From assembly GCA_965285935.1 (NCBI GenBank), contig OZ260663.1:68572001-68636000 (forward strand): a stretch of DNA of 64,000 nucleotides, written 5' to 3'. Numbering within the stretch: position 1 is the stretch's first letter; each line of letters opens with the position of its first letter. This DNA comes from Ophelia neglecta. Lineage: Eukaryota. The translations under genes were made by a program, and so were the position numbers. The notes under the pieces are model-generated. The model was given only the letters and a program-made list of their open reading frames with translations. It searched no databases and was not told the DNA's origin. Below, piece by piece: positions 36,191 to 55,440 of the stretch.

Positions 36191-39100
36191 TTAGGTGGGA
36201 TGACCTGTGTTCTTTTCATTTGGATCTATCTCCTCTGGAATGGAATTACCATTAATTGCTGTGATTTGACGCACCCTCAGACTACAAGATCTTGTCAGTG
36301 GGATAGTATGGTCTGTGACATTGCCAACGGCAGTGCATCCATCTTCTGCCTGACCAATATTTGTCTCCATAGTTCCTGATAAAGCTACAGACAAAGAAAA
36401 GTCAAGTTGCATCTGTGTACTATGTCCTGATGTGGAGGGATATGGGCCAGCCACATTCTCCTCAGACATGTTTGCTTCGGTCATTTTTTTGCCTTTCTGC
36501 TTCACCCATTTGCTCTTACTTGCACTTCTCTTTGAGATGCGTTTTCGAGTTTTCTTTGATTGTTTGTCCACCTCTTCATTGTCATCATCAGCTTTGTCAT
36601 TTTTGCTTATGTTCTTTTCATTACTCGTTTTGTTTCTTTCACTGCTATCTTCATTTGCTTGAGGGTTAACAGTTTTTAACTCTAGATCAGTGCCACCTCC
36701 GGTAGAGTCCCACCTGGTGTAAGATTCACTGGAACCTTCCATTTCTTCTTCATCTTCCAGCAGCTGTGCACAGGAAATTGTGGAAAATGTATACAGAAAA
36801 GGATTAAGGGAGGAATTCACAGGAAATATGAACACAGCTATCCACATGGCTATCTTAGGGTCCACAGTTGCGCCCCGTAGAGATGTGATGCCAATAATTA
36901 TCGGAGGAATCCAGCAGGCACAATCAGTGAGAACAACTAAAGCCAGCTTGCGAGCAATTTTTGCTTCCAAGTCCCCAGTTAAACCTGTTCTTATGGCTAT
37001 GGATAGAAATACCCCTATATATCCAATGGCTAGGAATATAAGTGCGGCAAGATTAAAACCAACAAATATGGCTGTCGCATACTCCCATCCTGTTACTTTG
37101 CCCTCAGTGAGATTAAACAAGAAGCATATGCCATGCTGAATATAAGTGTTTTTTCCAAAGTAATTTAGATTTATTATAGGAAGCATACTTAATATGCCCC
37201 AAATGAGCCATCCAATAAAGGTAAAGGCCTTGATTGTGCGCCTACCAAAACCTCGCTTACCAAAACCAATTACGAGCACTCTGTCTGCAGTGATCAGAAC
37301 TAAAACATATACTGACATCTCAGAGGAGAGCATTGAAACAAAACCTGCCAACTTGCAAAAAAGAGACTTCCTCCATGTGGCATCATACAAATAATAAACT
37401 CCTCTGTAGTGTAAATCAGCCCCGGCAATAATAAGCAGATAAATACCCATTAGCAAGTCTGCAATGCCTAAATTTTGAATAAGGAATGACAAAGGTGTTG
37501 TCTCTTCCTTTTTCTTTCTCCACATAATTACTCCAAGATTGCCCAAAAAGGCAACCAATGCCAATCCCCAAATACCAAATCGGAGATAGACACTGGCCAT
37601 TAAATCAGAACAGGTGGAATATTCTGTTGGAGGATGAGTACATGCGTCCACATGTGTGGCAGCACAACAGAACTGAAACCCAGGAGTGAAAAGCACATCC
37701 AAACTAAGGAGCTTAAGAAAAGTTTTCTCGTGGACTAACTCCAAAGGGTTAAATCTTAGGTCTAGAAATTTCAGAGATTTCAAACCTTGTAGAGCATACT
37801 CTGAAATGTATGTGATTTGATTGTAAGAAAGATTCAGGTATTGAATTCTTGACATGCCGGAAAATGCGTTTGCAGCAATTCCTTTAATGGCCAACATTTC
37901 CAGGTGGAGTTGAGGAAGTTGATGTAAACCATAGAAAGAAAACCCATCCACATTTTTTATAGGGTTCTGGGTCAGATCCAGAAATCGTACACCTGGGAAA
38001 GATGTAAAGAGGTATGTGGTTAATGAAGAAATGTGATTTTTTGACAGAATCAAGTCCCACAGGTTTCTCAGCACCCTGTCAGGGTCAGCTGATTGAGCAG
38101 TGGGAGAGTTGAATCCGTACTGGATATCCTTTTCTGAAATACCATTTTCAGTAAGATCTAAGCGAAACAATCTAGGAAAATATCTATAGAAGTTTGGAAG
38201 GAATGGAATTTGATTCCTGGGTAGTAGCAGGATTCTTATTTCTTCAGGCAACTGAGGAATGGTGGTCAATCCTTGTTCTGCACAGCTAACAGCCATTCCT
38301 TCACACTGGCAACCATTTGGACATTTATATCGACAGTTGGCTTCGTCAAACCCACTTTCACAGTCCTTCACTCCGTCACATAGGCCATCCAGTGGGATGC
38401 AGGCAGAATGAGAATTGCACCGAAATTTTCCATCACATTTAGTGTCCAACACATCTGGCTGCTGAAATGGAAACTCGTCACACAGCATTTCATCCTCACC
38501 AAATGGACATGTGTTGTGACCATCACACACTCTGTCCATCTCAATACAATAACTTTTGTAGCATTTAAACATTCCTGGGCACACAGCTTCTTCACAGTGG
38601 TCAACTGTAGACTGGCCTGGCCCTTGACAGAGCAATTGGTTGTTGAATCTCAGCACACATGCACTGCTTCGTGGATAGCATTGGTTGGCATCAGGCTGTT
38701 TTATAGCATCATTGCATGCCATGTGGTGTGGGTTGTAGACACTGCATGTCCATGATACATTTGCAGATATCTGAACACACTTTTGCTCTATTAATCTGGC
38801 AGGGTCATGGGTAGCTAGCAACTCCTTAAAGGGGCATGTATCTTTAGGGCCACACCCCCAAAGCATGCAGTAGTCACAGTCTTTTTCATCTAGGCCACCA
38901 GTGCATTCTGCTTGGTAGTTACATAACTCTGCTGGTGAAATGCATTTGGTCTTGTCACAGGTTAATGCAGAATTCTTAGTGCACATTGGCACTAGGTTCC
39001 AGACACATTGTTCATCAGAATTATCACGGCAGTTTTTTTCCTTATCGCAAACCTGTGAACCATGAATTATTTCACCACTCTTACATTTGAAGTGCATCGT

Positions 39101-40144
39101 GCCTACTAAAGACTTTCTTTGATGAAATACATATGTGATATTTCTAGTCTCCTTGTCCCTTTGAACAAGCACCTCTGTTTCCCAAAGTGCGGACTGGTTT
39201 GTGAGTATCTGCTCATCACAGTCAACCTCATCAGTGTTTTGGGGGCAATGAGAGACTCCGTCACACCAGAATTGAGCCAGAATACATGAACCGTCGGAAC
39301 AGGTTTTGAAATCAATTGGACAGTTTTTTGGTTGGTTGTCTGTCGAAATGGAGGCAGTTTGGCATAACACATGCTGGGTGTCTTCTGGTTTCACTATTGC
39401 TTTGCAGTTGGCCATCTTTTCAATCTCCCATGTGGTCAGATTTAATTGATCTATTTTTGATACTAGTTTATGACATGCAGTGTAATTGCTGTCTGTTTTA
39501 TTTGTGGTGTTATCTTGTTGTTGATTATGCAATGGAGTAGCAACCCATACTGCCCCGTGTTCTTTTTTATGACCCCACATGATAAATACCTTGTTTACCC
39601 ATTCTAAATCTTTATTTGATATGACTGCTGTCTCTCCGCCATATCTCTTACACAACATGCTAGCTACGGATGGGTCAAACTCCTCTGAGTGTGGTAAAAA
39701 GAAAGGATGATTGTAGGAAAACAACATATAGCATTTAGAATGGTAAGCTTCCCAGTCACGACCACACTCTAAGTCTGATTGTTGTCTTCCCACTAAATTT
39801 TGGCTTATGTTGCTTTGTAGTAAACCCAAAATTATGTCATTTTTTTCCTTTTTCAATTTACTTCTCTCCAGGGTGTCAGTTTCATCTGTTCCATATTCAC
39901 ACACCACCCCCATATTTGGATTGCTCCATTCACCTGGAATTTTGACCCATCTTGTATTGACTTGGGGTGTGTAAACTGCCATTGCAACTTTGTCATTATG
40001 GCTGTGATGCATTCCAAAGAGTTCTTGATGATTAATTCTTGTCCAGTTTGTGGAGACAGTCGGGTACATCTGGTCACCCCATTGGGTTTGGTACCATTCA
40101 GCAAAGGTCAACAGGCCACCCTCAGACCATTGGAAGTTATGAGT
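36191..40144 (-). CDS. GRL101-like LGR GPCR, coding exon 2 (end of CTL1, CTL2, LDLa repeats, LRRNT, LRRs, 7TM, long C-tail; 1317 aa)
   Basis: Acceptor TTTCAG|ACT CAT at 40144 is in frame with the 1306-aa ORF. LDLa repeats (CSDGSCILAQFWCDGVSHCPQNTDEVDC etc.), CPNGCQC LRRNT, LxLxxNxI repeats, FCC..CSDLM hinge, NLGIADLLMGIYL, ITADR, CWIP and NSSLNPFLY. Confidence 0.95.
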   Translation of the reverse strand, partial: THNFQWSEGGLLTFAEWYQTQWGDQMYPTVSTNWTRINHQELFGMHHSHNDKVAMAVYTPQVNTRWVKIPGEWSNPNMGVVCEYGTDETDTLERSKLKKEKNDIILGLLQSNISQNLVGRQQSDLECGRDWEAYHSKCYMLFSYNHPFFLPHSEEFDPSVASMLCKRYGGETAVISNKDLEWVNKVFIMWGHKKEHGAVWVATPLHNQQQDNTTNKTDSNYTACHKLVSKIDQLNLTTWEIEKMANCKAIVKPEDTQHVLCQTASISTDNQPKNCPIDFKTCSDGSCILAQFWCDGVSHCPQNTDEVDCDEQILTNQSALWETEVLVQRDKETRNITYVFHQRKSLVGTMHFKCKSGEIIHGSQVCDKEKNCRDNSDEQCVWNLVPMCTKNSALTCDKTKCISPAELCNYQAECTGGLDEKDCDYCMLWGCGPKDTCPFKELLATHDPARLIEQKCVQISANVSWTCSVYNPHHMACNDAIKQPDANQCYPRSSACVLRFNNQLLCQGPGQSTVDHCEEAVCPGMFKCYKSYCIEMDRVCDGHNTCPFGEDEMLCDEFPFQQPDVLDTKCDGKFRCNSHSACIPLDGLCDGVKDCESGFDEANCRYKCPNGCQCEGMAVSCAEQGLTTIPQLPEEIRILLLPRNQIPFLPNFYRYFPRLFRLDLTENGISEKDIQYGFNSPTAQSADPDRVLRNLWDLILSKNHISSLTTYLFTSFPGVRFLDLTQNPIKNVDGFSFYGLHQLPQLHLEMLAIKGIAANAFSGMSRIQYLNLSYNQITYISEYALQGLKSLKFLDLRFNPLELVHEKTFLKLLSLDVLFTPGFQFCCAATHVDACTHPPTEYSTCSDLMASVYLRFGIWGLALVAFLGNLGVIMWRKKKEETTPLSFLIQNLGIADLLMGIYLLIIAGADLHYRGVYYLYDATWRKSLFCKLAGFVSMLSSEMSVYVLVLITADRVLVIGFGKRGFGRRTIKAFTFIGWLIWGILSMLPIINLNYFGKNTYIQHGICFLFNLTEGKVTGWEYATAIFVGFNLAALIFLAIGYIGVFLSIAIRTGLTGDLEAKIARKLALVVLTDCACWIPPIIIGITSLRGATVDPKIAMWIAVFIFPVNSSLNPFLYTFSTISCAQLLEDEEEMEGSSESYTRWDSTGGGTDLELKTVNPQANEDSSERNKTSNEKNISKNDKADDDNEEVDKQSKKTRKRISKRSASKSKWVKQKGKKMTEANMSEENVAGPYPSTSGHSTQMQLDFSLSVALSGTMETNIGQAEDGCTAVGNVTDHTIPLTRSCSLRVRQITAINGNSIPEEIDPNEKNTGHPT

Positions 40145-41808
40145 CTGAAATTGTTGAAATTAAGTCAGTTTGTAGTATTGGTTAATGTCTACTAGAGTGA
40201 CAATTCTACGTAATGTGACTTGGAATTAAAGTTATAAACAAGTGAATTTTCAGTGACCAGTTATCAAATTTATAGAATATCTTGATTCTTTGAATTAAAA
40301 AAAAACATTTTGAAGTTGAAAATTCATGCTTGTTATAAGATAAATCTGAATTGTAAAAAAATGATGTTAAATTGAAATTTAACTGAAAGTACGATATTTG
40401 AAGCTGGCCTAATTGAATGCAATATTTTCTAAGAAGGAGAATGAGTCCCTTGCATCTAATTATCAATAAAGAAATATATATGATCAGTCACTTTTGATGG
40501 CAATTAAAATTGTCAATCAAACTTTGCTAGTGCAACATGTCTTTTTTCATTGGGGAGACAAGAACTTGCTTTATATATTTTTAAATCACAAAACAATTCA
40601 ATACTGCACCTAATGGTTACCATGATAATCACATATCCCTGTCCGGAGAGCTACCAGCAATGGTGCTTTTTTACAGTCTCAGGGTCAAGAATAATTATGG
40701 TTTCATAATTATGCACCTTGAATTTTGTTGGGTTTTCAATTTTTTGTTTCATACATACAACTTTATAAGAGTTTATAATAGTCATGGGTGAAGCCCCCAC
40801 TTCAGTGTGGAAGAGTTAGCCCAAATATGGGTGGTGCAATTGACTTGAAAGTTATAGGAAATACAGGAGTGCAAACACGACACCAATGTTAGTTTTTCCA
40901 AATTTGAAATGCAATTAATTCAATTTTTCTGGTAAAAAAGACCAGTTTTCAAAATGAAAAGTCCGTATGGGCAAGGCATTAAATTTAAAAACCGAAAATT
41001 GAAATCATTTCTTCTTTTGGCACCCATGGTTTTCTTTTTTGGAGCAAATTCCAATACTTTGCCTGGCATGTCCCCATGCACTTTACATGGAGAAGCTGAA
41101 GAGTGTGTTGTTATTGATCATGATAATGCAGCCATGCGTAATAACTCTTAATCAGACTTGGTCTTGCCTTGATTTTGAAGTTTGCCTCATTATTCTAATA
41201 AATGATAGAGTTTGTTTCTGTCTGCTTGCTTTTGGTTAATATCTCTGGATGACACAAAAAAAAGAGAGATACTAGTAATCAGATGTAAAGACTACAGGCC
41301 GACATGTTAGCATGTTGTTTAGTTCCCAGTGTGAACGACAAAGACTTCAAAGATGGCATAGTGACAGTGGTAATTGAACATGCCCGGGATCTAGCATGAA
41401 CAACAAAAGATCTAGCTAGCATTCATGAGTTTTGTGAAGAAAATGTGACAATACTAAAAACATTTATTTATAATAAGTTACCATAGCAACCTAAAATAAA
41501 ATATGCTCATAATTTTGTATTGGGCGGAAGAGTTGATATTAAAGCAATGCAACCAAAGCTTAAGACTCCAGCCTACTGGGGATAGGCAGGCACACTGTGA
41601 CAGTTGCTGAAACTGTGGTTAGCTGTGTGGGAAATCACAGTCTGCTATAATCAAATATTACTTTAGTGGACATTACAGTTGGCAATCTGACAAGGAAACA
41701 TTGATGGTAATAATAATTATCAATGAAAATTGTTCAGACAAGAGTAATGATTGTTAGTTATATGATCCTGTGTTTTTTTTATTTTGTAGTATTGGGCAAA
41801 GCCTCATC

Positions 41809-44800
41809 ATGAGTGATCCAAGGCAAGAACTGGCCGAAAAACTGGACAGAGAGCTTGATGAATTCCTTCAAGAGAGCATCAACAATCCCAGAGGACCAGC
41901 AATGGATCAGAGTTTTCTTGACATGGATCCGGAGACATTAGCAGCGGTAACTGTGTTCACCATATTTTCTGACTTTCCAAATGTTTCAAAGACAAATATA
42001 TGGTGATCTGCAATGAGTTCAATATGATACTACTGCCAGTGCCACCTCAGACATATAAATTGCTGTTAACTTGGCAACTGCAGTTGACCTTGACTCACTA
42101 CATGTATAGAAATTTCTTGCATACGAGTTACTTGTCTTTTTCAATTTTAACAAAGGACGTAATAAAGCTACAGCATTAGTCAGGGGGTCTGCGTTAGACT
42201 ACTCTTTTTTCTGTGATATGCACCCACCTGGCATTTAACATTTATGTGTCCCAAAAAGAAATGAAATAAATCCCACTTCCATCTTTATGCTTAACACTTT
42301 CACTGCCAATGTCAACTTTTCTTGAGAATATGTAAGCTAGCAATTATGTAAGTTGTACTAAGTAGCATTGCCAATACAGTTACTTTGGCCAATGCTAGAA
42401 AATTCCAAACATAGGTTAAAATGTTACCTATGGACTTTTCGGAGTAGATATACCCTTGAATAAGTTAATACCATGTTGGCTAAACTGAAAGATTTACAAA
42501 TATATATGGAAATAAATTGGCACGCATAGATATGCACCTAGGATAACCTTTAGCGGTGGAAGAGTTTAAAACCCCAAAACCTAGGGAAAATCGTCAAATT
42601 GAAAGATTTAGACAGAAAAAAGGGATAGTGCTTATTAAACCATTGAAGCATCTACTAAGACCATGGTGCTCATATTTTGTATCATCTGGTTAAGATACTT
42701 GGTGACTTTACTTCAGGTTTCTAACTGTCTTGATATTAATTGTTTTAATTAACAGGAACTCAAACAACATCCAGCTTTCATGACTGACTTTGACGAAAGC
42801 AAACCCTTGTCTCCTGCAATGCAAGGACTGCAAGCTCTGAAATACGAGTCGGACTCTGCTGAATGTGTGTACCTTTTGAGCTTACTGTAGAGTTACCAAT
42901 TTGTAATCATAACTTTTGACCGTATGGTGTCAGGAATAACCATGTTAGTATTAAATAAAGATCTTACTCTTGTACATGTATTTGTACATAATAACCATAC
43001 AGATGAATGCATGACTGGAGGATTGTATATTATTATACTGGTACCACTCTTTTCTGTCAGAATGGTAATACTGACTGTGTGAATGTGATTTCTGAGCAAA
43101 GTATTAAGCTTAAAAAAATAATGGTTGAGGTTCTCGTCAGAACTTTCTCTATGAGTGATGCCAGCGGCCAGTTTTTATTTCTTATTTGACTTTGTTTTTA
43201 ATTGTTACATGTACAATATATAATTACTTTACTTTTTGACATAAAAAATGGAAAACTTTCGATTGTTTATATAAATTAGGACATTGCCCATCGGGGGGTT
43301 TGTCACAGGGTCTTTCATTGTTTGGGACATGTGTGTCCCAAGAGGAGAAGGGTAGTATGGAAATATTCAATATTTATTTACTATGTTTTATTTTTTCTTA
43401 TTTTTTGAATTGCAGTTAATGCCACCAGTTACAAAGAAGACGGGAATCAAAATTTTCAGAAAAAAAAATACAGATGGGCAATTGATAATTATACAGAGGG
43501 AATCAAATTAAAAACCAAAAATAAAGAATTGAATGCCATTCTGTATACAAATAGAGCTGCAGCTCACTTCCATTTAGGTAAGATGCATTCCTATTTGGAA
43601 TTTATGCCTCGTTCTCAGTGGTTATGCATTAATGTCATAGACATGTGAGAAAGTCATGTGCAGATGGAGCATTGCAAATTCATATTTGTGATATTGTGAT
43701 ATTCATTTATACGTATTCATTTCAGGGAACTTCAGATCTGCATATAATGATGTGATATTTGGAAGAAAGTTCAAGCCAGACCACAAAAAGGCTATAAATC
43801 GGGGTAAGCTGTTCTAGTCACAAACCTACATCCCATCCTATATTAATCTCAGTCCTAGTGAAATATTTAAAATGAGCATTCTCTGCTGGCTTTTGTGATT
43901 CACTGCCCAAATTGTTTTCAGATGAGAGAGTATTCAAAATGGCTTGTTGTTTTCATTTTATCATAAAACAGGTGCCCAATGCTGTATGGAATTAAAGAAA
44001 TATGACATGTGTGTGAAATGGTGTGAAGACGGTTTACTGGTGAGTCATTACTTAAGTAAAATATGCTTTGATTTAGGTTTGAGAAGGTGTCTGCATTAAG
44101 GTAAAGAACATGCAGGTAAAGCACCGTTTAATCTTGTTTATTCAGAAATCGTGCCTTAAATTTAGAATTAGAAATGTATTCTTATGTCATTATTATTAAG
44201 TTTTGTGTTTCTCATGTCCTATGACCAAAAATATAAGGTCGGTAGGTAAAATGCAAATATTGCAAAAATTATGTATGCTTAAATAATGTTTTGAATTTTA
44301 TATACACTGTGTGTTATATCCAACAATTTTAATCACCAAAAGGAACTGATGTTTAATTAATTGTTTGATTGATTATAAAGAAAAAAATAGGGAACAATTT
44401 TCTGTAAGTGCAACATTGTATTTTTGACTGTTATTGCAATGTGCAATTGGTATTTTATTATTGAAAGATACTTGTAATATTAGAAATGTGATATTTGTTT
44501 TTTGATGTTTCAGTAGTGTACTACAAATATCTTATATACAAAAGAGGATTTTCTCCTTTTGAACTGAAATTCTATGTGTTAACTGATGACTCATTTGCTT
44601 ATGAAATAATATTTAAACTTTGATATCAAAAGCTCATGAATCCACTTACAGTTAAGGTTACATGTCATTGAATATATATCATCACTTCTTCAAATAACTG
44701 AAACAAAATAATAAGTATTTATTAAGGCCATAGTTATTTGATTACTTGGTTTACGGATCTCCTGAAAACTACCGACTCAAAGAAAAAAATTGCCATTTGG

Positions 44801-47800
44801 CACATTTCTTAAAATTTACCACCGACTGTAAAGTCACGTCTTTAAATATTTTGTCAGCCGGGTTTTGTCATTGACATTTTAGTTTGACCAAAGCATATCC
44901 AAGGGCCCCGTTGTATTATCTGTGCACGAGAGCAAATCTGGAGAACATAGATTTTTTCAACGTGTGGCAGGCGAGGAAACTGTAAAAGATGTTAAGTTTT
45001 GTGGGTGTGATTTTTTCCTGACAAATTAGGCCAAGAAAATCCGTAAACCAATTAATCAAATAACTATGGCCTAAGGATATCCACCAAAAATCATTGCTCA
45101 GACTATTCTCAATTAAAAGTGATCTCTTAAGGATATCCATCAAAAAAATTATTGCTTTAATACAACTCTGCATAAAAAATGCATGTGGGGGCACTTTATT
45201 ACTCAAAATTTTCTGGGGGTGGAGGGGATGCCCTCTCCTTTAACCCTTTGTATGCCATGATTCCTGCAATACTTGTTGTTGAGTGAGCTTGATGCTTTGA
45301 CCATTGACATCTGTTCTTCACTTTGCAGCTGGATGGTAAAGACGACTTTTTCCTGAATCTTCGAAACAAGGCAACTAAACTGAAGGCATGATCATGTATA
45401 AGTATATTAAGTGTATATGTTTATATGCATCTGGAAAGATTACTGAATCTGCTATGTAATTTCTAGTCTAATGTGGCCCTAAATGGTTCATAATTTGTGT
45501 GACTGCCACAAAATTCATAAAACTGGACAATTTATAAGGTCAAATTCTTGATTTCATTGGTACTCTAACACTGATCCACAAACATTTATTGTGCCATATA
45601 ATTGTAAGCTATTCCTATCATAACATTTTAGTTCCAGTAATCAGAGGCATAGTTATATTGTCTCATTATAACTGTTAGATTTTTAACGTAAATATACAAC
45701 ACTGTAGGTAGTTGAATTCCTCATCATGTAAACCCAGCTATTATCTTATGATCATATTTCAGAAAGAACAGGAGAGAGATCGAAGAAAGGCTTTGGCCAA
45801 TGAAAGAAAACTAGAAGCAGAGGAAGCTAAGCTGATTAAAGTCATAATTGTAAGCTAATACAGTAACTGCCCTTATAGACATTGCACTGCTAATATAAAG
45901 ACACACTAATTTTTTCACCAACAAAGTTGCCGTCTGCTATAAAGCCCCCACAAATCTTAATGATGAAATCAGACGACACCCTTTTATAGCAATTTTGAGT
46001 CCTACTATGTTAGTTTATGTCATTCAAAATTATTCTTGAAATAAACCCTTTATTTGATTGACTAAATATGAAAGTTAGAGATACCTCAGGTCTCTTTGAA
46101 AAAATACCTGTTAATGGAGGCATTTATACCAGGAAGCCTCCTTAAGGAAAACTCATAGCAGCATGAAACAGAAATTATTACAAATTGGTCAGTGGTACAT
46201 TTGTTTGGTTACCGATAATCACAGTATTTCAGCCAGGCATTTTGGGGATAAAGGAGTAGCTCCAATGGTAATGGCAAATGTGATTCCTAAACTTTCCTTA
46301 AAAGTTTAAATACACATAAAACTCTGGTTCCTGCTTTGCAAACAACAAAAAGGTAGTTAGTAGGATATTTAAATTTTAAATTTAAATCTCATTATTTTAA
46401 TCTCATTATTCTTTTATACTTGCACCTGTAGGAAAAAGGAATACAACTAGCATGTCCAAAAAAGAATGCAGACAAAAATGCCCTTCTTGCAAGTCTAGAA
46501 ACTCATCATCCATCTGGTGCTAAAGTCAAAATGGACGCTGAAGGCAGCTTGTCATGGCCGGTACTTTTCCTCTACCCAGAATTTGGAGAAACAGATTTCA
46601 TTGAATCCTTCCATGAAAATGCAAGGTAATGTACAGTCTTTAGTACTTCATAATTAATATATTAATTACAATTTGTAGGGATTAATGAAATAATGCTAAA
46701 AAACCTCTACATTAGACCAAAAACAAAAAATGAGCTATGAGGTTGTTTAAAGGACATGATCCTACCAAAGAAGCCTACTAAAGTAGATAAATAAAAAATT
46801 CATCAAATCAATAAAACTTAGATAAAAAAAATAAACTCTGTTGTTCAATGTGTTTAGTACAATTTAAAATATATATATTTCTGGTGAAAGACAGTGGTAT
46901 ACTCTTAGACTTTGCCCTCTGTAGTGGCTGCCAATATTAAAAATAAAGCCTGCATCTCGTATGGCAACAGGGCAAGGCAACATAAATTGGACTGGTTCCT
47001 GCCACTATTCACTGTAACAGATAATTCTCAGACACTGGAGTGGTTGAAAAAGGGGTTGGCATTTGGCAAATATCATTAACATTTTAGGGTGTGTCAGTGA
47101 TGGATCCAGGATTTCAGGAAGGGAGGGGGGGGGGGGGGGCAAATTTTCCAAGGCTGACAAGCAAATGTCTAGATTGTCCATGCTACCAACCCTCTGAAAC
47201 CAGTTTGTGTGGGTCCAGAAATAGGCACTGGTTGGGTCCCCTTTTTGGCAAAAGGGGGGCTGGTTCCCAGGGCTCCCCTGTATCCGCCACTGTGTATGGA
47301 TTATCATGAAACTGAATATTAAATATTCTCCGAAAAACCATTGTACAAAGTAATAGAGGGTACAGAATCCATGGGACAAAACAGTACTATACTGGCTCTT
47401 ATGATTCAGTTTTACTAGGAACTCATTTGCTTGTTACCTAAATCAGTTAGTTAATGGAAAAAATGAATATATAAACATAAATCCAGCTTCATTATTTGAT
47501 TTGACAATTTTCATTGCAGGTTTGAAGATCATATTAGTTTAATGTTTGGTTCAGATATTGAGCCCCCTGGCTGGGATCCAGAGAAACACTATACAGCCCA
47601 GTCCATAGAGGTAACATCTCATATAACATTCTACCCCAGTCTACCCCAGTTAATATTATGCTTTGAGGCTGGATGACAAAATCAAGGAAGAGGGGTGGTA
47701 CCCTTTATACATGTATCTGTCTCTCTGAACAATATTACCTAGCTCATCCGTCAAGAAAGTACCAGGCTACAATTAATTTTTAATTACCATTTTATCAAAT

Positions 47801-48895
47801 AACTTTTATTTATAACCCTACCTGATATGGTCAAAGCATGGAAAAGAATCCAAGCTAAACTTTCAGCAGTGACCTGTTCGATGGTCTTGCATGCACACCA
47901 ACTGTTTGATCCTTTTTACATGTACCATCCTGCAGGCAATTCAGCAGCAAAATTTTATGGATATTGACCACAATGGAGGCAGAAATAAAATCTGCCTCCA
48001 GCCTACTTACATGTATGACAGTTCAGTTGTTTGATGGTTGTTTCATCAAATTAAGACCCTTTTTTCACATTATACACACACTGTAACATATACAATTTTC
48101 TTCATCTTACTAAATGCATTGATTAATCTGATGTATAGATCCTCTATGAGATAAAAGAAGAGGAAAGACTTCATGAAGTGCCAATGTCATCTACGCTCAC
48201 TGAGGCACTCAAATCACCGGGGTGGGTACTATGCATGAAAGATTTAGGCTTGTTCATTACATATACTATCTAGTAGATTTTCAGCGTGATTTCCACTGAT
48301 TTGCAAAAAAGTATTCCCATACTAAGGAAAATACAAATTTAGGCATGTGATTGGCAGGAAATCAGTATTCATAAATTTTTTTAGATTCACTTTCCATCTA
48401 TAATGCCAAATACCTGTTGATACTCATCTTCATGTGGGAACCATTTCTTTTCAAACAAATGAAAACAGGTGAACCTTTCTTGAAAAGTACTATCAAGCCG
48501 TTTGGCCCCACAGCAGTGGACAGACTGAAGGGTCAACTACAGTCATTTCTCGTATTTAAATACAATGCACAAACCAGCTAACAATGGACCAATGAGAGTT
48601 TCAATTTAAACCAAAATTATTGTCAACAGTTAGCATGTAATAAAATAGATTATAAATCTTTAGAACTGTCACATTCACAAAAGGACAATAAGTAGTGACA
48701 AAAATGTTAATAAAACTTATATTTTAGTTTAAAAAAAATGTATGCAGTCTCCAATTTCAGTAATGCAATGTATTCGGAACTTAAAACTCTTTCATTGCAC
48801 ATTGCAGGTATGTTGTGAATGGTGGGATGCCAGGATTCTTTATTTTAGTAAAAGGTTCAACATTTGCCAAGAACTTTCATTCAAGATACAAGTAA
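41809..48895 (+). CDS. TTC4: Tetratricopeptide repeat protein 4 (TTC4/Cns1/Dpit47 Hsp90 co-chaperone), 11 coding exons, 384 aa
   Basis: Exons 41809-41946, 42756-42864, 43416-43577, 43726-43803, 43972-44039, 45329-45385, 45763-45849, 46432-46625, 47520-47610, 48139-48221 and 48808-48895 total 1155 nt. Motifs: HPAFMT, LQALKYE, TPR YKEDGN..YTEGIK..AILYTNRAAAHFHLGNFRSA, and wheel-domain WPVLFLYPEFGETDFI. AATAAA at 49002. Confidence 0.93.
44726..45071. mobile_element. PIF/Harbinger-like MITE in a TTC4 intron
   Basis: TAA|GGCCATAGTTATTTGATTACTTGGTTTACGGAT ... ATCCGTAAACCAATTAATCAAATAACTATGGCC|TAA. The ~33-bp TIR has one mismatch. Confidence 0.88.
45386..45762 (+). other. GC-AG intron of TTC4
   Basis: The exon reads ..RNKATKLK then GCA TGA (stop). 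No phase-0 GT donor exists in the exon. AAG|GCATGA joins in frame to CAG|AAA GAA CAG (KEQERDRRK). Confidence 0.7.
47095..47292. mobile_element. MITE with CAGTGGCGGAT-type TIR and poly-G
   Basis: CAGTGATGGATCCAGG ... CCTGTATCCGCCACTG with near-matching 5-bp flanks TGTGT/TGTAT. Confidence 0.7.
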
Positions 48896-49591
48896 CTAAT
48901 TACAGTACATGGTACATGCACTGTCCATAATTTATATTAGATCATTTTAACTTTGTTACATGTCAGTCCTATTTTGAAATATATATATTATATATTAATG
49001 AAATAAACAAGCTATTTATTATTGAAACAAATGTGTTACATAAGATATGTTAATTATGGTCGCCTATGTAACCTAAAACAACTGGTGTGGAATCCGACTT
49101 TAGATTTAAACAATGGTGGCAACAACTGCAGACTGATGAAAAACTATTTGTCTCAATTTTTCAAACTATTGTGGGGTTTAAAACTACTGTAATGGTAAAA
49201 ACATTTTTAAAATTTGGTACAAAGACATAATTAGGCCTATGTATATATAGCCTACAAGCCAATATGACAACTTTCATTAAATAAACCCACAGAGGCTTAA
49301 ATTGAGGCAAACAAGCATGTGAGGAGGCCTCTTTTGCCATGCCAAGTGACGAGATTGGCCTGATAAAGTTTTTAAAATCGACTTCTAGACATGAGAGGAA
49401 TTTTAAATCCACCTATGTTGTCTTATTTTAGGGGACCCTGCTACACCCACTATACCCTGTAAGGTTATTTGAGAGCATGTGATATATATTATGTGTTGAG
49501 AAACCATATTCTTTCAGAACTTGCGGTGGTCAGTTATGTGAAAAATACTTGAAAACCCCCTAAATACATTTAGTTAAAAACAAATCTTTAC

Positions 49592-52528
49592 CTTTAATGA
49601 ACGTTCAAGGCCAAGGAAAATGCCAGTCATCTGCCAGATTTGTCCCAAGTTTCCGCAATCCCCATTATTGGCAGCAACCTCCAGGACTGTTGTTAATTCT
49701 TGGGCAGAACCAATGTTCCACATGTACCCCCCACTTTTAGCACATTCCACCTCGGCTTCATTCCAACTGTCCACAATGGTCAGATTGAATTCATGACTTG
49801 CTTTGTGGTACATGTCCCCAGTATTTACCTCTATGTAACAACTGTTTGAAGTGTTTGTGGGTTTTGAGCTACTGTAGGGCAAAGCTTCAAATTTTAGCAG
49901 TCGTTGCATGATTTCCCTCATTTGTAACATTCTGTACAAATTACAGTGTAGATGCTCATGTATAACGTGTATTTCATGAGACTTGGTGAACCATTTAATT
50001 TTATCATTTGGTAAATAAGCCCATCTGTAATCTGACAGGATTTGTTCAAACTCACTTATATATCGCCTTTCTTGTAGAACAAGTCTACCATGCTGTTGAG
50101 ATCCACAGGGGTGCATTCTGGACTGACTTTCTGTCTCTATTTGAAAATAATATCCTTTTTTATAGAGTATAGTAAACTGTTGTGCTTGCTGAGATTCAAG
50201 AAGCTTTATGGTACCACATGAGCTAAAGTACAATTGGTTTCTTAGGTCGTCTAGCAATGAAACCTGCATGCAGCGCTCTGCTTCGACTCTCATAAACAAA
50301 CTGTTTATTGGTTTCCCGTGTTTACATGTTGAAGAGACGGAAACACGTACGTTATTAGTTATGACATGTCCTTCAGATGAGCTTTCTTGAGAATCAATGC
50401 TCACAGAGAAGAAGCGCCCATGGCTTGTGGATTGTAGCTTGAAAACATCTTTACATTCGTCTGACACCTCTAACTGGCTTGGCTTTGGGCCAGAAACTGA
50501 GAGTGGAATCCAGGAAGCAAAGTAATCTGCAAAAGGGCCAGGAGATCTCACTCTTGTCCTTTCCGGCTTTGGAACAGGCTGCTCATATACCCACTCTGAA
50601 CTCGTTTTCCACCTCTTGATTTTGGTCATTGCAATTGCAGCAAGGAGCTGATATGTTTGGGGAGTCAGTATTTGAAGAAAAAGTTTGCCTCTGTTATGAA
50701 CTAGAAGAGGATGCCAAAAGATATACAGACAATAGCCTGCATTTACTTTTATTACCATTGAATTATCTTCGGCAGAAATAACATAAACCTCGGTGCCCTG
50801 CTCGTGAATGTGCAAACCTGGAAAAATTTGAAGCCCTTTGCATTTTGTTGTCTGCCAATCAATGTCAAGTTTGACATTATCATGAAAAGAATATGCTAAG
50901 ATAGTCAGAGTATTATATGCAGAAACATAAAACGGCATGTCTTTTAGATCTGTTGTAAAGTTTTCAAGTTCACAGAAAGGGCCAACATAATTTTTGATGA
51001 TTGACCCACTTTCCAATCCTGTGTCTATAAAAACTATCCCAGCATATGGGCACCCATCTTCCATATTGTTGGTGTATATTGTAGAAATTGAAACATGTTT
51101 CAAAAATATCTTTATATAATTTGTTTTTATAGTTGCAAATGTCTTGGTGCATTGGCCTGGATGGTTTACTGTATATTCCTTTTCTTGGTCAGAATCACAT
51201 TCTTGGTTATCATGAGGTACAGATTTTAGATGAATACGTACATCTTTTATTGCGGCAAAGTTCCTTATGTCAAAGACAGCCATTGAGACAAAAAGAGTGG
51301 ATCTAAAGATAATAAATTTCCCATAGTTTGTTTTGTTGATGGCTTGTGTACTGGAGTCTGGTCCGTCAAAAACCAAAATGTTGTTTCTAGTTGTCGGACC
51401 AAAGTTATCTCTACCATCAGCCTCATAATAGAGGTGAACATTGTCAATGTAAGAAGCCTTGATTATAAATTTAAGATGTAAGCGAGACAAAGTGATATAA
51501 TCAGCCGGTATGCTAAAGCTTTTGTCCATCGGGTTCTCTAGAGATGGTAGTCTTACGACCGGTATGTGTCCAGTAGTTCTGTCATAAAGTACTGTTCCTT
51601 TACTGATTGTGTCATATACAGCTTCAATGGTAAACTGCCTCGATGATCGGCTGTCCCCCACTTGGCTTCTCAACACAACACGTAATGTACTACTCAGAGA
51701 AATGAAACTAATCGGCAAGGCACTTTGGCACAAATTTTCCTTGTCATACCAAATTAATTGCCCTTTATATTCATTATAAACAATTACTTTTGTTCCCTCA
51801 CAGTTGAAGGTGTCATCAGTGTCAATTTTGGTGAAAGTAAGGTTTACGAGTCCAAAGTCCGAATGTATCAGCCATTTATATAGCAAGTGATCGTATTTGT
51901 CTACAGTTTTATGCATCTTGATATGTCCACAAATACTGTGAAATATGGCAAATTCCTGAAAAAAAAAGCCTTGACCATATGAGTTTTGTGATAAGGTATC
52001 TCCAAAAATTCTTTTAATATCCACGATATTGTGCTGACCAAGCTTACCAGGTTTACTGCAGTATGTGGATCTTATCAGTAATTTGCATGCTGCCAGTCTC
52101 TCCAGAACACCATTCATAACATAAAAAGGTTCTTCAAAACACAGTTTCAGGGCAGTTGATAGAATTCTCCAGTGCAGATGGTATATGTGTTGATGTAGAT
52201 TTCTGGTTTGAGAGGAGAAGCACTCTTGTTGGGTCATTTCACTGAATGACAGCAGTAGTTCCTTAGGATTTATCCCATGTGAGTTAACAATGTTGGACCT
52301 TAGCAGACACATATCACTTTGCTGTGAGCGTTTTGACCGGGTCAGTGAATGTCTTGTGGCAAAATCCTGTGTTGAGGAATGGTTAACATTATATATGTCA
52401 GTGGTACTGTCCATTTTCTTCCAATTCTGCAGTGAATTCGCCCTGCCTGTCATCAGTATAAAGAAATATACTGCCAAATACAGGACTGTGTATTTTGATC
52501 TTTCTGTCCTGAGGTGTTTGAGATTCAT
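49592..52528 (-). CDS. GRL101-like GPCR, coding exon 1 (signal peptide, ~3 degenerate CUB-like modules, first half of a C-type lectin domain; 979 aa)
   Basis: ATG at 52528 is followed by hydrophobic YTVLYLAVYFFILMTG and a furin-like RSKR. CUB-like motifs: WLIHSDFGLVNLTF..C..LC..FISLSSTLRVVLRS, VFDGPDSS, VGPFC. The exon ends WNEAEVECAKSGG..IFLGLERSLK|GTAAAG in phase 0, matching the phase-0 acceptor at 40144. Confidence 0.85.
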
Positions 52529-52860
52529 TTTACCTTGTCTGCAATGGCCTGCTAAATCATGCCTGTGACACAAGGTGTGGCTCTTTTGCTCAGCTTTCTT
52601 GAATACATCAATTTGAAATGTTCCTAATATGATTCCTGCTGTTGTACCTGTTCTATTATCCTAGACCACATAAATGTATATTAAATTACACTAAAACTAT
52701 AAGGCAGAGATGTACATGTACTACAATAATTGAAATATGAGTGTGTTTTCCACTCATATAGAATACCAGCCTGAAGAATGTACATCACATGAATATCAAG
52801 TGAAACTGGAACAGCTACTGATTGTATTACAGCTCTGTACTGTATTAAAATTTCCAAACA

Positions 52861-54129: not shown

Positions 54130-54470
54130 AGCTTGGCCGAGTGGTTATGGCATTCTCCTTGCAAGTGGTAAATCAGGGTTTAAATGTAGATTGCGTAAAA
54201 CCCAAGACATAAAATAGGTACTGAATACAGATAGCTCCCCTGCCAGCTAGGCGCCTTGTATTTCGGGGTTGGTTTATGACAGATCAATCCAGTGTCAGTA
54301 AATTGTGACTGGGTGGGGTTCCCTGTCTGGTGTCTACGGCAGGTACTCCAGTGAGGCAGCACTGTATAAAGAGGGCATTGGGCCCACTGTCACAAGTAGG
54401 CACCGTGGCAATATGACCATATAAGTGTTGAAAGCCAGGTAAAACCCCAAACAACCACCGACCAACCCAG
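54130..54470 (+). mobile_element. tRNA-derived SINE (Meta/core-domain-like) with an I-clade-like tail
   Basis: A-box TGGCCGAGTGG, central GTGTCAGTAAATTGTGACTGGGTGGGG..CAGTGAGGCAGCACT, tail TGACC..GTTGAAAGCCAGGTAAAACCCCAAACAACC. Flanked by GGCAACCCTGCTGCCAT on both sides. Confidence 0.7.
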
Positions 54471-54512
54471 GCAACCCTGCTGCCATAAAACCAAGATCCC
54501 AGATGTCCCTGG

Positions 54513-55222
54513 CAAGATACCTGCTGTCCCAAGCAAGATACCTGCTGTCCCAAGCAAGATACCTGCTGACCCAAGCAAGATACCTGCTGTCCCAAGCAAG
54601 ATACCTGCTGTCCGAAGCAAGATACCTGCTGTCCCAAGCAAGATACCTGCTGTCCCAAGCAAGATACCTGCTGTCCCAAGCAAGATACCTGCTGTCCCAA
54701 GCAAGATACCTGCTGTCCCAAGCAAGATACCTGCTGTCCCAAGCAAGATACCTGCTGTCCCAAGCAAGATACCTGCTGTCCCAAGCAAGATACCTGCTGT
54801 CCCAAGCAAGATACCTGCTGTCCCAAGCAAGATACCTGCTGACCCAAGCAAGATACCTGCTGTCCCAAGCAAGATACCTGCTGTCCCAAGCAAGATACCT
54901 GCTGTCCCAAGCAAGATACCTGCTGTCCCAAGCAAGATACCTGCTGTCCCAAGCAAGATACCTGCTGTCCCAAGCAAGTTACCTGCTGTCCCAAGCAAGA
55001 TACCTTCTGTCCCAAGCAAGATACCTGCTGTCCCAAGCAAGATACCTGCTGTCCCAAGCAAGATACCTGCTGACCCAAGCAAGATACCTGCTGTCCCAAG
55101 CAAGATACCTGCTGTCCCAAGCAAGATACCTGCTGTCCCAAGCAAGATACCTGCTGTCCCAAGCAAGATACCTGCTGTCCCAAGCAAGATACCTGCTGTC
55201 CCAAGCAAGTTACTGCTGTCCC
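54513..55222. repeat. 21-bp minisatellite, ~33 near-identical copies
   Basis: Unit CAAGATACCTGCTGTCCCAAG with rare single-base variants and no spacers. Confidence 0.97.
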
Positions 55223-55440
55223 AGGCAAGACTGCTGCCATTAAACCAAGATACTTGATGTCCTGGACAATCCGGTTATCATTAAACCAAGAAATGTAATG
55301 CCATAGGCCTCTCTGCTGCAATTAAACCAAGATACCTGTTGTCCCAGGCAGTCCTGCCGCCAGTTTACCAAGATAATTGATGTCCCAGGCAGTCCTGCTG
55401 CAATTAAACCAACATATGAGATGTCCCTGACAGTCCTGTT
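55222..55440. repeat. Older degenerate ~41-bp tandem repeat related to the 21-mer
   Basis: About 5 units resembling GGCAGTCCTGCTGCAATTAAACCAAGATACCTGTTGTCCCA, with related units at ~54100 and 54471. Confidence 0.75.

What the first reader, a model, noticed from the sequence alone, without database searches (positions are those of the whole stretch)
36191..52528. Giant ~2296-aa lectin-type GPCR: CUB-like x3, C-type lectin x2, LDLa array, LRR, 7TM, built from just two huge exons
Seen: the 999-aa and 1306-aa ORFs, 9.4 kb apart, join through a phase-0 GT-AG intron (49591-40145). The junction rebuilds one C-type lectin domain (WNEAEVEC..IFLGLERSLK|THNFQWSEGGLLTFAEW..GVVCEY). Established: GRL101/RXFP-type (type C) LGRs carry LDLa + LRR + 7TM. 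Here ~1200 extra N-terminal residues add a signal peptide, a furin-like RSKR site, degenerate CUB-like modules, an unrecognised ~300-aa region and two CTL domains. Inference: a glycan or pattern-recognition ectodomain wired directly to a G-protein output, i.e. a candidate immune or chemosensory/settlement receptor. The near absence of introns across many domains suggests retroposition or extensive intron loss.
Basis: partly seen in the sequence, partly recalled or inferred. Interest (0 to 1): 0.85.

Follow-up and report, generated by a model that had tools for sequence, protein, structure and literature searches.

The report
Giant CUB–lectin-like GRL101-type receptor gene
This is a real, intact invertebrate gene for a 2,296-residue relaxin/GRL101-type G-protein-coupled receptor with extra CUB and C-type-lectin-like domains, but similar receptors are already catalogued in molluscs and a ribbon worm, so it is a new member of a known, still orphan, kind.

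Summary
Two minus-strand ORFs (979 and 1,317 coding residues) are joined by a phase-0 GT-AG intron (49591-40145). The same two-exon layout, with the intron at the same point and TTC4 nested antisense inside it, recurs at an orthologous locus in another assembly. It also recurs in other assemblies and in paralogues of this genome.

Exon 2 encodes the C-terminal half of a C-type lectin-like domain (CTLD), a second CTLD, five LDLa modules, an LRR block and a class-A 7TM with intact motifs. The second CTLD is confirmed by its predicted fold (Z 11.4). Human RXFP1 is the closest solved structure.

Exon 1 encodes a signal-like start, a conserved RxKR site and two CUB-like modules supported by profile comparison. 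A third claimed CUB is unsupported. About 320 residues stay unrecognised, and the exon ends with the N-terminal CTLD half.

The glycan or pattern-recognition reading is not supported. Neither CTLD has an EPN/QPD or WND motif, and the gene is single-copy with a syntenic orthologue. The architecture is not new: Biomphalaria CTL-LDL-LRR GRL101-like receptors were published in 2025, and CUB-CTL-LDLa-LRR-7TM proteins of 2,296 and 2,298 residues are annotated in bivalves.

No RNA data exist, so splicing and expression are untested. The scan also noted a similar two-ORF receptor elsewhere in this genome (s1-735121).

The parts
49592..52528 (-). Coding exon 1 (979 codons, ATG at 52528, donor after 49592)
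   Evidence: Orthologous ORF P0003 matches at E 1.4e-80.
52439..52528 (-). Signal-peptide-like N-terminus (about residues 1-30: basic start, then the hydrophobic run YTVLYLAVYFFILMTG)
   Evidence: Read. P0003 and P0004 also start with hydrophobic leaders. No signal-peptide predictor was run.
52328..52339 (-). RSKR dibasic (furin-like) motif, residues 64-67
   Evidence: Aligns with RFKR in orthologue P0003 and is absent from P0004. Cleavage is inference.
51599..51931 (-). CUB domain 1 (residues 200-310)
   Evidence: The homologous stretch passes the Pfam CUB gathering score in P0003, P0004 and three paralogues. The family profile hits cubilin CUBs at 1e-21. hhalign against canonical CUBs gives prob 96%, E 1e-9.
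51209..51526 (-). Beta-rich module claimed as CUB-like 2 (residues 335-440); not verified
   Evidence: No Pfam or PDB profile hit. hhalign is not significant. Only a DGP-type pattern is visible.
50819..51166 (-). CUB-like module 3 (residues 455-570; conserved CPYAG...GPFC)
   Evidence: hhalign against canonical CUBs gives prob 88%, E 3.4e-6 over 81 columns in register. There is no direct Pfam or PDB hit.
49844..50806 (-). Unrecognised Cys-containing region (residues 575-895), conserved within the family only
   Evidence: Seven invariant positions, four of them cysteines, across 5 homologues for residues 685-895. No CUB, PDB or Atlas match for 685-895. Residues 575-684 were searched only within the whole-exon profile and gave nothing. 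The AF2 model is unusable.
49592..49843 (-). CTLD 1, N-terminal half (residues 896-979, ending in the FLGL motif)
   Evidence: Lectin_C at E 0.083 alone. The family profile hits the Endo180 CTLD at 3.7e-6. Aligns to 236-290 of the Lectin_C domain of P0028.
40145..49591 (-). Single coding intron, phase 0, GT-AG, 9,447 nt
   Evidence: Same position and phase in L002.
41815..48889 (+). Nested antisense TTC4 gene inside the intron (context, not part of the receptor)
   Evidence: Cns1/TTC4 Wheel domain and TPR hits. About 10 collinear tblastx blocks match the L002 intron.
36191..40144 (-). Coding exon 2 (1,317 codons plus stop at 36191-36193)
39890..40144 (-). CTLD 1, C-terminal half (exon-2 residues 1-85)
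   Evidence: Aligns to 296-382 of P0028, inside its Lectin_C domain, at E 2e-6.
39359..39769 (-). CTLD 2 (exon-2 residues 126-262)
   Evidence: AF2 pLDDT 76.6, pTM 0.73. Foldseek gives 217 PDB hits at E<=1e-3, and every listed one is a CTLD. VIA-align Z 11.4 to the CD72a CTLD. Profile hits PLA2R at 1e-18 and DEC-205 at 1e-17.
38333..39325 (-). LDLa array: LDLa1-3 (residues 274-424), a conserved Cys-rich spacer (425-520), LDLa4-5 (521-604)
   Evidence: Pfam Ldl_recept_a at 6e-25 in 5 stretches. Positions read.
37595..38332 (-). LRRNT, leucine-rich repeats and a short Cys-rich hinge (residues 605-850)
   Evidence: Pfam LRRNT, LRR_8, LRR_4. Aligns to RXFP1 from its LRRs onward.
36761..37594 (-). 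Rhodopsin-class 7TM (residues 851-1128) with NLGIAD, DRV, CWIP and NPFLY motifs
   Evidence: Pfam 7tm_1 at 9.5e-22. Motifs and hydrophobic segments. 68% identical to the orthologue.
36194..36760 (-). Cytoplasmic tail of about 190 residues, Ser/Lys/acid-rich
   Evidence: In frame and 33% identical to the orthologue tail.

Best explanation
The locus is one intact protein-coding gene with two coding exons. It encodes a 2,296-residue type-C (relaxin/GRL101-type) leucine-rich-repeat GPCR of an invertebrate animal.

Reading from the N-terminus: a signal-like leader; a conserved RxKR site; a CUB domain; an unverified beta-rich module; a second CUB-like module; about 320 unrecognised residues; two C-type lectin-like domains, the first split by the only coding intron; five LDLa modules; an LRR block; a short hinge; a class-A 7TM; and a long tail.

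Shown: the domains, the conserved gene structure, orthology with synteny, and membership of a large family in this genome.

Inferred mechanism: the ectodomain captures a protein or glycoprotein ligand. The LRR and LDLa core, which is conserved, does the RXFP1-like binding and activation. The fast-evolving distal CUB/CTLD part adds or tunes specificity. The signal then passes through the hinge to a signalling-competent 7TM that couples to a G protein.

The CTLDs look like protein-binding lectin-like domains, not calcium-dependent sugar binders.
For: - Gene model: ORFs and splice sites.
- Conserved structure: the same two exons, intron position and phase, with TTC4 nested antisense, at orthologous locus L002.
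- Same plan elsewhere: L003, L033 and the P0008 contig, plus three fully checked paralogues. Eleven of 16 paralogue loci start exon 2 in mid-CTLD.
- Junction rebuilds one CTLD.
- Domains: Pfam LDLa, LRR and 7tm_1; CTLD2 fold at Z 11.4 and profile hits; CUB1 and CUB3; ESM features for residues 190-640 point to CUB clusters.
- Type C: human RXFP1 (7tmw) at 2.7e-67 over LRR plus 7TM, against LGR4 at 3e-42 and TSHR at 3e-39. The 7TM tree places it in a 100%-supported GRL101-like clade, apart from glycoprotein-hormone receptors.
- Signalling motifs NLGIAD, DRV, CWIP and NPFLY are present.
- Conservation falls with distance from the membrane: 7TM 68%, LRR 50%, LDLa 48-54%, CTLDs 29-39%, the CUB-like modules 20-37%, the remaining stretches 15-35%.
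- Polymorphism in exon 1: 8 synonymous and 13 non-synonymous changes, no stops or indels, pN/pS 0.43.
Against: - No RNA evidence. No RNA run holds the locus, so splicing, expression and UTR exons are untested.
- Exon 1 of this copy gives no significant Pfam hit on its own. Its AF2 model failed at pLDDT 34.7.
- The middle 'CUB' and residues 575-895 are unassigned.
- The ligand, the G-protein coupling and any RXFP1-like tethered-agonist role for the LDLa modules are inference from family knowledge. GRL101-type receptors are still orphans (PMC11863921).
- The tree held no bona fide RXFP or Lymnaea GRL101 sequence, so type C1 versus C2 is unresolved.
- pN/pS 0.43 rests on 21 SNPs.
Confidence: 0.8

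Rival explanations
1. Same gene, different function. It is an innate-immune or chemosensory pattern-recognition GPCR whose CTLD/CUB ectodomain binds glycans or microbial or environmental cues.
For: - The distal ectodomain evolves fast, at 20-39% identity against 68% in the 7TM, with pN/pS 0.43.
- The genome holds at least 35 related LDLa-LRR-7TM loci, including a tandem cluster on C1 at 143-144 Mb.
- Biomphalaria CTL-bearing GRL101-like genes lie in a schistosome-resistance region (PMC12297450).
- CUB and CTLD are common in invertebrate recognition proteins (general knowledge).
Against: - Neither CTLD has EPN/QPD or WND.
- Only the N-terminal halves match lectin profiles.
- This copy is single-copy, lies outside the cluster, and has a syntenic orthologue. 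That pattern fits a conserved physiological receptor better than a diversifying one.
- There are no expression or binding data.
Confidence: 0.2
2. Two separate genes: a secreted CUB protein from the upstream ORF, and an independent N-terminally shorter LDLa-LRR GPCR from the downstream ORF.
For: No RNA shows the junction. The ORFs are 9.4 kb apart with another gene between them.
Against: - Each ORF would then end or start in the middle of a CTLD.
- Exon 2 has no leader; its first in-frame Met is at residue 26, with no hydrophobic start.
- Consensus donor and acceptor sites sit at exactly the phase-compatible points.
- The pairing, the intron position and the phase recur in the orthologue, in other assemblies and in paralogues with introns of 0.2-4.4 kb.
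Confidence: 0.04
3. A decaying or silent family member: an unexpressed pseudogene that still has open frames.
For: This copy's CUB1 scores below Pfam detection, while the orthologues and paralogues pass. pN/pS of 0.43 is relaxed. Some paralogue loci have shortened ORFs of 607-1,027 aa.
Against: Open frames of 979 and 1,317 codons carry no stop or indel in the reference or in three resequenced runs. All 7TM hallmark motifs are kept. Conserved cysteines are shared with an orthologue at about 27-46% identity, which implies long-term constraint.
Confidence: 0.05

Closest known systems
GRL101 of Lymnaea stagnalis and 'GRL101-like' type C2 LGRs (orphan)
   Same: An LDLa array, then a short LRR block, then a short hinge and a rhodopsin-class 7TM. 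The nearest named database relatives are all labelled GRL101 or GRL101-like. It falls in the same strongly supported clade in the 7TM tree.
   Different: It has only five LDLa modules, against twelve described for Lymnaea GRL101 (bioRxiv 10.1101/2021.04.15.440029). It adds about 1,250 N-terminal residues (CUB-like modules, an unknown region, two CTLDs). It sits in a separate subclade of unnamed sequences, not with the cross-phylum GRL101 set of Lineus, Lytechinus, Oratosquilla and Hypsibius. The coding region has two exons, whereas LDLa and LRR units are usually encoded by single exons.
Biomphalaria sudanica SudRes2 GRL101-like GPCRs (CTL + LDL + LRR + 7TM), PMC12297450
   Same: A C-type lectin-like domain placed N-terminal to LDLa, LRR and 7TM, in an expanded, partly clustered lophotrochozoan family.
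   Different: The snail proteins are described with one CTL and one LDL, and no CUB region. This gene has two CTLDs, five LDLa modules and an additional CUB-bearing region of about 900 residues. It is a single-copy conserved locus, not a hypervariable cluster member. In the tree, the one Biomphalaria sequence included (B. pfeifferi 'GRL101', P0046) is in a different subclade.
Saccostrea echinata LOC133187405 (2,296 aa) and Solemya velum ScPMuIL_008755 (2,298 aa), predicted proteins
   Same: Giant receptors with CUB, then Lectin_C, then LDLa x4-5, LRR and 7tm_1 in the same order. They are of nearly identical size.
   Different: Their N-termini carry ApeC and F5/8-type-C domains and a single canonical CUB. 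They show no detectable similarity to this exon 1: the phmmer search of 1.84 billion representatives found only P0003 and P0004. Identity in LRR plus 7TM is 34-35%, and they sit in a different 7TM subclade.
Lineus longissimus GRL101-like protein P0028 (1,434 aa)
   Same: Lectin_C, then LDLa, LRR and 7TM. Both halves of this gene's CTLD1 align to its Lectin_C domain. It lies in the same 96%-supported 25-row clade.
   Different: It has a single CTLD and no Pfam-detectable CUB. It is about 860 residues shorter and 36% identical in LRR plus 7TM.
Human relaxin receptor RXFP1 (type C1 LGR; PDB 7tmw)
   Same: The best solved-structure match, at 2.7e-67, in one stretch across LRRs, hinge and 7TM. It shares the LDLa + LRR + 7TM plan and the CWIP and NPxxY motifs.
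   Different: RXFP1 has one N-terminal LDLa, ten LRRs and no CUB or CTLD (established knowledge of RXFP1). No relaxin-like ligand is implied here.

Membership tests
Rhodopsin-class (class A) GPCR | Seven-helix domain matching 7tm_1, with D2.50, a D/ERY-type motif, CWxP and NPxxY | tested here: met
   Pfam 7tm_1 at 9.5e-22, 78 bits against a cutoff of 30.5. NLGIAD, DRV, CWIP and NPFLY are present, and a hydrophobicity scan (19-residue window) flags TM-like segments across residues 848-1089.
Leucine-rich-repeat GPCR (LGR) | An LRR ectodomain with LRRNT, joined by a Cys-rich hinge directly to the 7TM | tested here: met
   LRRNT, LRR_8 and LRR_4 lie at exon-2 residues 608-801, directly before the 7TM. 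The alignment to RXFP1 is continuous from the LRRs through TM7.
Type C LGR (relaxin/GRL101 type) | LDLa module(s) N-terminal to a short LRR block, and a 7TM closer to RXFP/GRL101 than to types A or B | tested here: met
   Five LDLa modules. RXFP1 at 2.7e-67, against LGR4 at 3e-42 and TSHR/LHCGR/FSHR at 1e-36 to 1e-39. The GRL101-like clade has 100% support, apart from glycoprotein-hormone receptors.
Type C2 (true GRL101 orthologue group) | Groups with Lymnaea GRL101 and its one-per-genome bilaterian orthologues; a long LDLa array | tested here: inconclusive
   The window falls in a different subclade from the Lineus/Lytechinus/Oratosquilla/Hypsibius GRL101-like set. No Lymnaea GRL101 or bona fide RXFP sequence was available for the tree. 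It has five rather than twelve LDLa modules.
C-type lectin-like domain (fold) | The CTLD fold with its conserved Cys framework and WIGL-type core | tested here: met
   CTLD2: Z 11.4, rmsd 2.3 A over 107 residues to CD72a, with 273 chains at Z>=8; profile hit to PLA2R at 1e-18. CTLD1: its two halves align to one Pfam Lectin_C domain in P0028.
Calcium-dependent carbohydrate-binding C-type lectin (CRD) | An EPN or QPD tripeptide plus a WND motif in the long-loop region | tested here: not met
   No EPN, QPD, EPD, QPN, EPS, WND or related motif occurs in either CTLD. The long-loop halves do not align to lectin profiles.
CUB domain | A match to the CUB profile (beta-sandwich of about 110 residues with the characteristic Cys pairs) | tested here: met
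   CUB1 is met through the family: Pfam gathering score passed in P0003, P0004 and three paralogues; cubilin at 1e-21; hhalign prob 96%. CUB3 has hhalign prob 88%, E 3.4e-6. The claimed middle CUB is not met. The window's own CUB1 sequence alone is below Pfam detection.

The most novel reading that the evidence does not exclude
The exon-1 module (CUB, an unknown beta module, a CUB-like module, then a Cys-rich region of about 320 residues with no detectable relatives outside this family) may be a new ligand-recognition cassette. It would define a lineage-specific repertoire of dozens of two-exon CUB-CTLD-LDLa-LRR GPCRs used for environmental, microbial or conspecific recognition. On this reading the present gene is the conserved founder-like member.
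Probability: 0.2. Interest if true: 0.6.

Novelty: new member of a known kind. Interest (0 to 1): 0.33.

Why it matters
GRL101-type receptors have been orphans since 1994, yet they are widespread and repeatedly expanded in invertebrates. This locus gives a cleanly defined full-length model with an orthologue, conserved synteny and a map of which ectodomain parts are conserved and which diverge quickly. That map is a practical starting point for deorphanisation. It also shows that large single-exon ORFs let such receptors be traced in unannotated assemblies. It does not change the picture of what kinds of GPCR exist.

Tried and rejected
- RNA evidence: the look-up of sequencing runs returned only three DNA-like runs from one sample. 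Read laying showed colinear contigs, with no joints and no loose ends at the donor.
- AF2 on exon 1 with a 5-sequence alignment gave mean pLDDT 34.7. I ran no fold search on it.
- The search for homologous proteins with whole exon 2 found nothing useful, because its words come from the first 500 residues. The A1 profile search found nothing.
- Searching this genome with exon 1 or with P0004 finds only the window itself. The paralogue N-exons are too diverged; A1 against A2 by hhalign gives only prob 37%, E 3.5e-4.
- The internal-repeat test of CUB1 against the second and third modules was not significant.
- Residues 685-895 gave no CUB, PDB or Atlas match.
- A paper search for assembly accession GCA_022702875 found nothing, and one for GRL101 + 'CUB domain' + GPCR found no paper.
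- The source organism could not be identified. The only hint is that the nearest Atlas CUB clusters are mostly annelid.
The only place both exon ends appeared together was a display string with a separator for a motif scan.

Full report
**1. Is it there?**

Both ORFs are present on the minus strand: 49574-52573 (999 aa) and 36191-40111 (1306 aa). The first ATG of the upstream ORF is at 52528. It opens a basic-then-hydrophobic leader.

The donor reads TTAAAG|GTAAAG at 49592/49591. The acceptor reads CAATTTCAG|ACT at 40145/40144. This gives a phase-0 intron of 9,447 nt.

The junction is nearly forced. Exon 1's frame ends six codons past the donor. Exon 2's frame opens only five codons before the acceptor. 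The two coding parts have 979 and 1,317 codons, which sums to 2,296.

All searches were done exon by exon, by reference.

**2. Comparative support for the gene model**

A phmmer search of 1.84 billion representatives with exon 1 found only two relatives: P0003 (E 1.4e-80) and P0004 (E 9e-6). Both are exon-sized ORFs lying just upstream of an LDLa-LRR-7TM ORF on the same strand.

At locus L002 the donor (GACAAGACG|GTAAAT) and the acceptor (TTATTAG|GCA) put a phase-0 intron at the homologous point of the same domain.

The L002 intron also holds the same nested antisense gene as the window. About ten collinear tblastx blocks at 50-89% identity link the two introns. The gene carries a Cns1/TTC4 Wheel domain and TPRs. 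L002 is therefore an orthologous locus with conserved nesting.

The same pairing of an N-exon of 800-1,000 aa with a C-exon of about 1,200 aa recurs widely:
- in L003, with a 233-bp gap;
- in L033;
- on the P0008 contig;
- in three paralogues of this genome that I could check completely, on C1, C8 and C5 at 92.4 Mb.

Eleven of 16 paralogue loci begin their large exon in mid-CTLD. One assembly even has an ORF that reads through the short intron (P0007).

The three resequenced runs are DNA and colinear with the genome. Within exon 1 they carry 8 synonymous and 13 non-synonymous differences, with no stop or indel. That gives pN/pS of about 0.43. No RNA run exists for the locus, so splicing itself remains untested.

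**3. Domains**

*Exon 2.* Pfam gives five LDLa stretches, LRRNT/LRR_8 and 7tm_1. The 7TM keeps NLGIAD, DRV, CWIP and NPFLY.

*CTLD1 (split by the intron).* In the annotated Lineus longissimus GRL101-like protein P0028, Pfam Lectin_C spans 234-376. The exon-1 tail aligns to 236-290. The exon-2 head aligns to 296-382. The two pieces are therefore adjacent halves of one CTLD. The family profile of exon 1 also hits the Endo180, DEC-205 and snaclec CTLDs with its last 80 columns.

*CTLD2.* With a 15-sequence alignment, the second CTLD folds at pLDDT 76.6 and pTM 0.73. Foldseek returns 217 PDB hits at E<=1e-3, and all the listed ones are CTLDs. VIA-align gives Z 11.4 with rmsd 2.3 A over 107 residues to the CD72a CTLD. 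Its profile hits PLA2R at 1e-18 and DEC-205 at 1e-17.

*Sugar-binding motifs.* Neither CTLD contains EPN/QPD or WND. Only the N-terminal halves align to lectin profiles. In CTLD1, the window and its orthologue have both lost the two cysteines that paralogues keep (CTAM... and ...IPC). These are lectin-like domains, not demonstrable carbohydrate-recognition domains.

*Exon 1, CUB modules.* Exon 1 alone has no significant Pfam hit, so the evidence comes from the family:
- CUB1: the stretch homologous to residues 200-310 passes the Pfam CUB gathering score in P0003, P0004 and three paralogues. The family profile hits cubilin CUBs at 1e-21, plus PCPE-1 and TSG-6. hhalign against canonical CUBs taken from related receptors gives prob 96%, E 1e-9.
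- CUB3 (residues 455-570): the same test gives prob 88%, E 3.4e-6, in register.
- The middle module (335-440): nothing.

ESM features for residues 190-640 point to CUB clusters.

*Exon 1, unassigned parts.* Residues 685-895 match nothing, although cysteines there are conserved across five homologues. The AF2 model of exon 1 failed at pLDDT 34.7.

*RSKR.* The motif at residues 64-67 aligns with RFKR in the orthologue but is missing from P0004.

**4. What kind of receptor**

The closest solved structure by sequence is human RXFP1, at 2.7e-67. It matches in one stretch across LRRs, hinge and 7TM, well ahead of LGR4, TSHR, LHCGR and FSHR.

Every named relative is labelled GRL101 or GRL101-like. 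In a 61-row 7TM tree:
- the window pairs with its orthologue P0005 (68% identity, SH-aLRT support 96);
- that pair sits inside a 14-row clade of unnamed sequences (100);
- that clade sits inside a 25-row clade with the CTL-bearing Lineus protein (96);
- everything lies inside a GRL101-like clade (100), separate from the glycoprotein-hormone receptors.

No bona fide RXFP or Lymnaea GRL101 sequence was in the tree, so type C1 versus C2 is not settled.

This genome holds at least 35 related loci, including a tandem cluster on C1 at 143-144 Mb. Exon 1 of this gene, however, is single-copy.

**5. How it probably works**

Between the window and its orthologue, identity falls steadily away from the membrane:

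| Region | Identity |
|---|---|
| 7TM | 68% |
| Hinge | 66% |
| LRR | 50% |
| LDLa modules | 48-54% |
| CTLDs | 29-39% |
| CUB-like modules | 20-37% |
| Remaining stretches (leader, pre-CUB, linker, Cys-rich spacer, tail, unassigned regions) | 15-35% |

The membrane-proximal part is a conserved LDLa-LRR-hinge-7TM engine like that of RXFP1-type receptors. A rapidly changing distal CUB/CTLD region is added to it.

I infer a protein or glycoprotein ligand captured by the LRR and LDLa core. The distal modules would add specificity, co-ligand binding or autoinhibition. Output would pass through a competent class-A 7TM. The ligand identity and the G-protein type are not shown.

A recognition or immune role remains possible, at about 0.2. 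The missing sugar-binding motifs and the single-copy, syntenic status of this copy argue against it.

**6. Novelty**

CTL-LDL-LRR GRL101-like GPCRs were described in Biomphalaria sudanica in 2025 (PMC12297450). Predicted proteins with CUB, Lectin_C, LDLa, LRR and 7tm_1 in that order, 2,296 and 2,298 aa long, are annotated in Saccostrea echinata and Solemya velum. Other GRL101-like proteins from Aplysia, Acanthaster and Dinothrombium carry CUB domains.

Three things are particular here:
- the exon-1 module, which has detectable relatives in only a few unnamed assemblies;
- the second CTLD;
- the conserved two-exon plan, with the intron inside CTLD1.

I rate it a new member of a known, still orphan, kind.

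The two-exon plan is shared by paralogues and by other species. Whatever removed the introns, whether retroposition or loss, predates this gene and cannot be resolved here.

The scan's first stage noted a similar two-ORF receptor elsewhere in this genome (s1-735121). My paralogue checks agree with that note.

Noticed in passing
window 41815-48889 (+), and L002 13765-17216 (antisense to the receptor there): A multi-exon TTC4 gene (Cns1/TTC4 Wheel domain, TPR) is nested antisense in the receptor's only coding intron. The nesting is conserved at the orthologous locus in another assembly, with about 10 collinear blocks at 50-89% amino-acid identity.
   Followed up: partly
window 54284-55321: A long, nearly perfect tandem array with a period of about 24 bp lies about 1.8 kb upstream of the receptor's start codon. 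It is open in several frames (CLGQQVS / GTAGILL repeats) and GC rises to 0.47 there. Not examined further.
   Followed up: no
G000:C1 about 143.19-144.12 Mb (loci L012-L023, L025, L029): A tandem cluster of at least 15 two-exon paralogues: a CUB-bearing N-exon of about 930 aa, an intron of about 300 bp, then an LDLa-LRR exon of about 1,118 aa. Several are near-identical, and some have shortened ORFs of 607-1,027 aa. The one large exon scanned against Pfam gave no 7tm_1 hit at E<=0.1.
   Followed up: partly
window 39890-40144 (-) and L002 exon 2 start: In CTLD1, the window and its orthologue have both lost the two cysteines that paralogues keep (CTAM... and ...IPC). This looks like paired loss of one disulfide.
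   Followed up: partly
P0007 (ENA contig, 1,860-aa ORF): In one related assembly the short intron inside CTLD1 has no in-frame stop. An ORF caller therefore fused part of the N-exon, the intron and the C-exon into one 'protein'. This is an artefact to watch for in ORF-based catalogues.
   Followed up: no
contig of P0006 (no DNA served), upstream of the 1,196-aa receptor ORF: The gene list for the 10 kb upstream of this relative's large exon shows zf-CCHC and gag-asp_protease ORFs on the opposite strand and no N-terminal exon within reach. That suggests a retrotransposon sits in or beside the homologous intron there.
   Followed up: no
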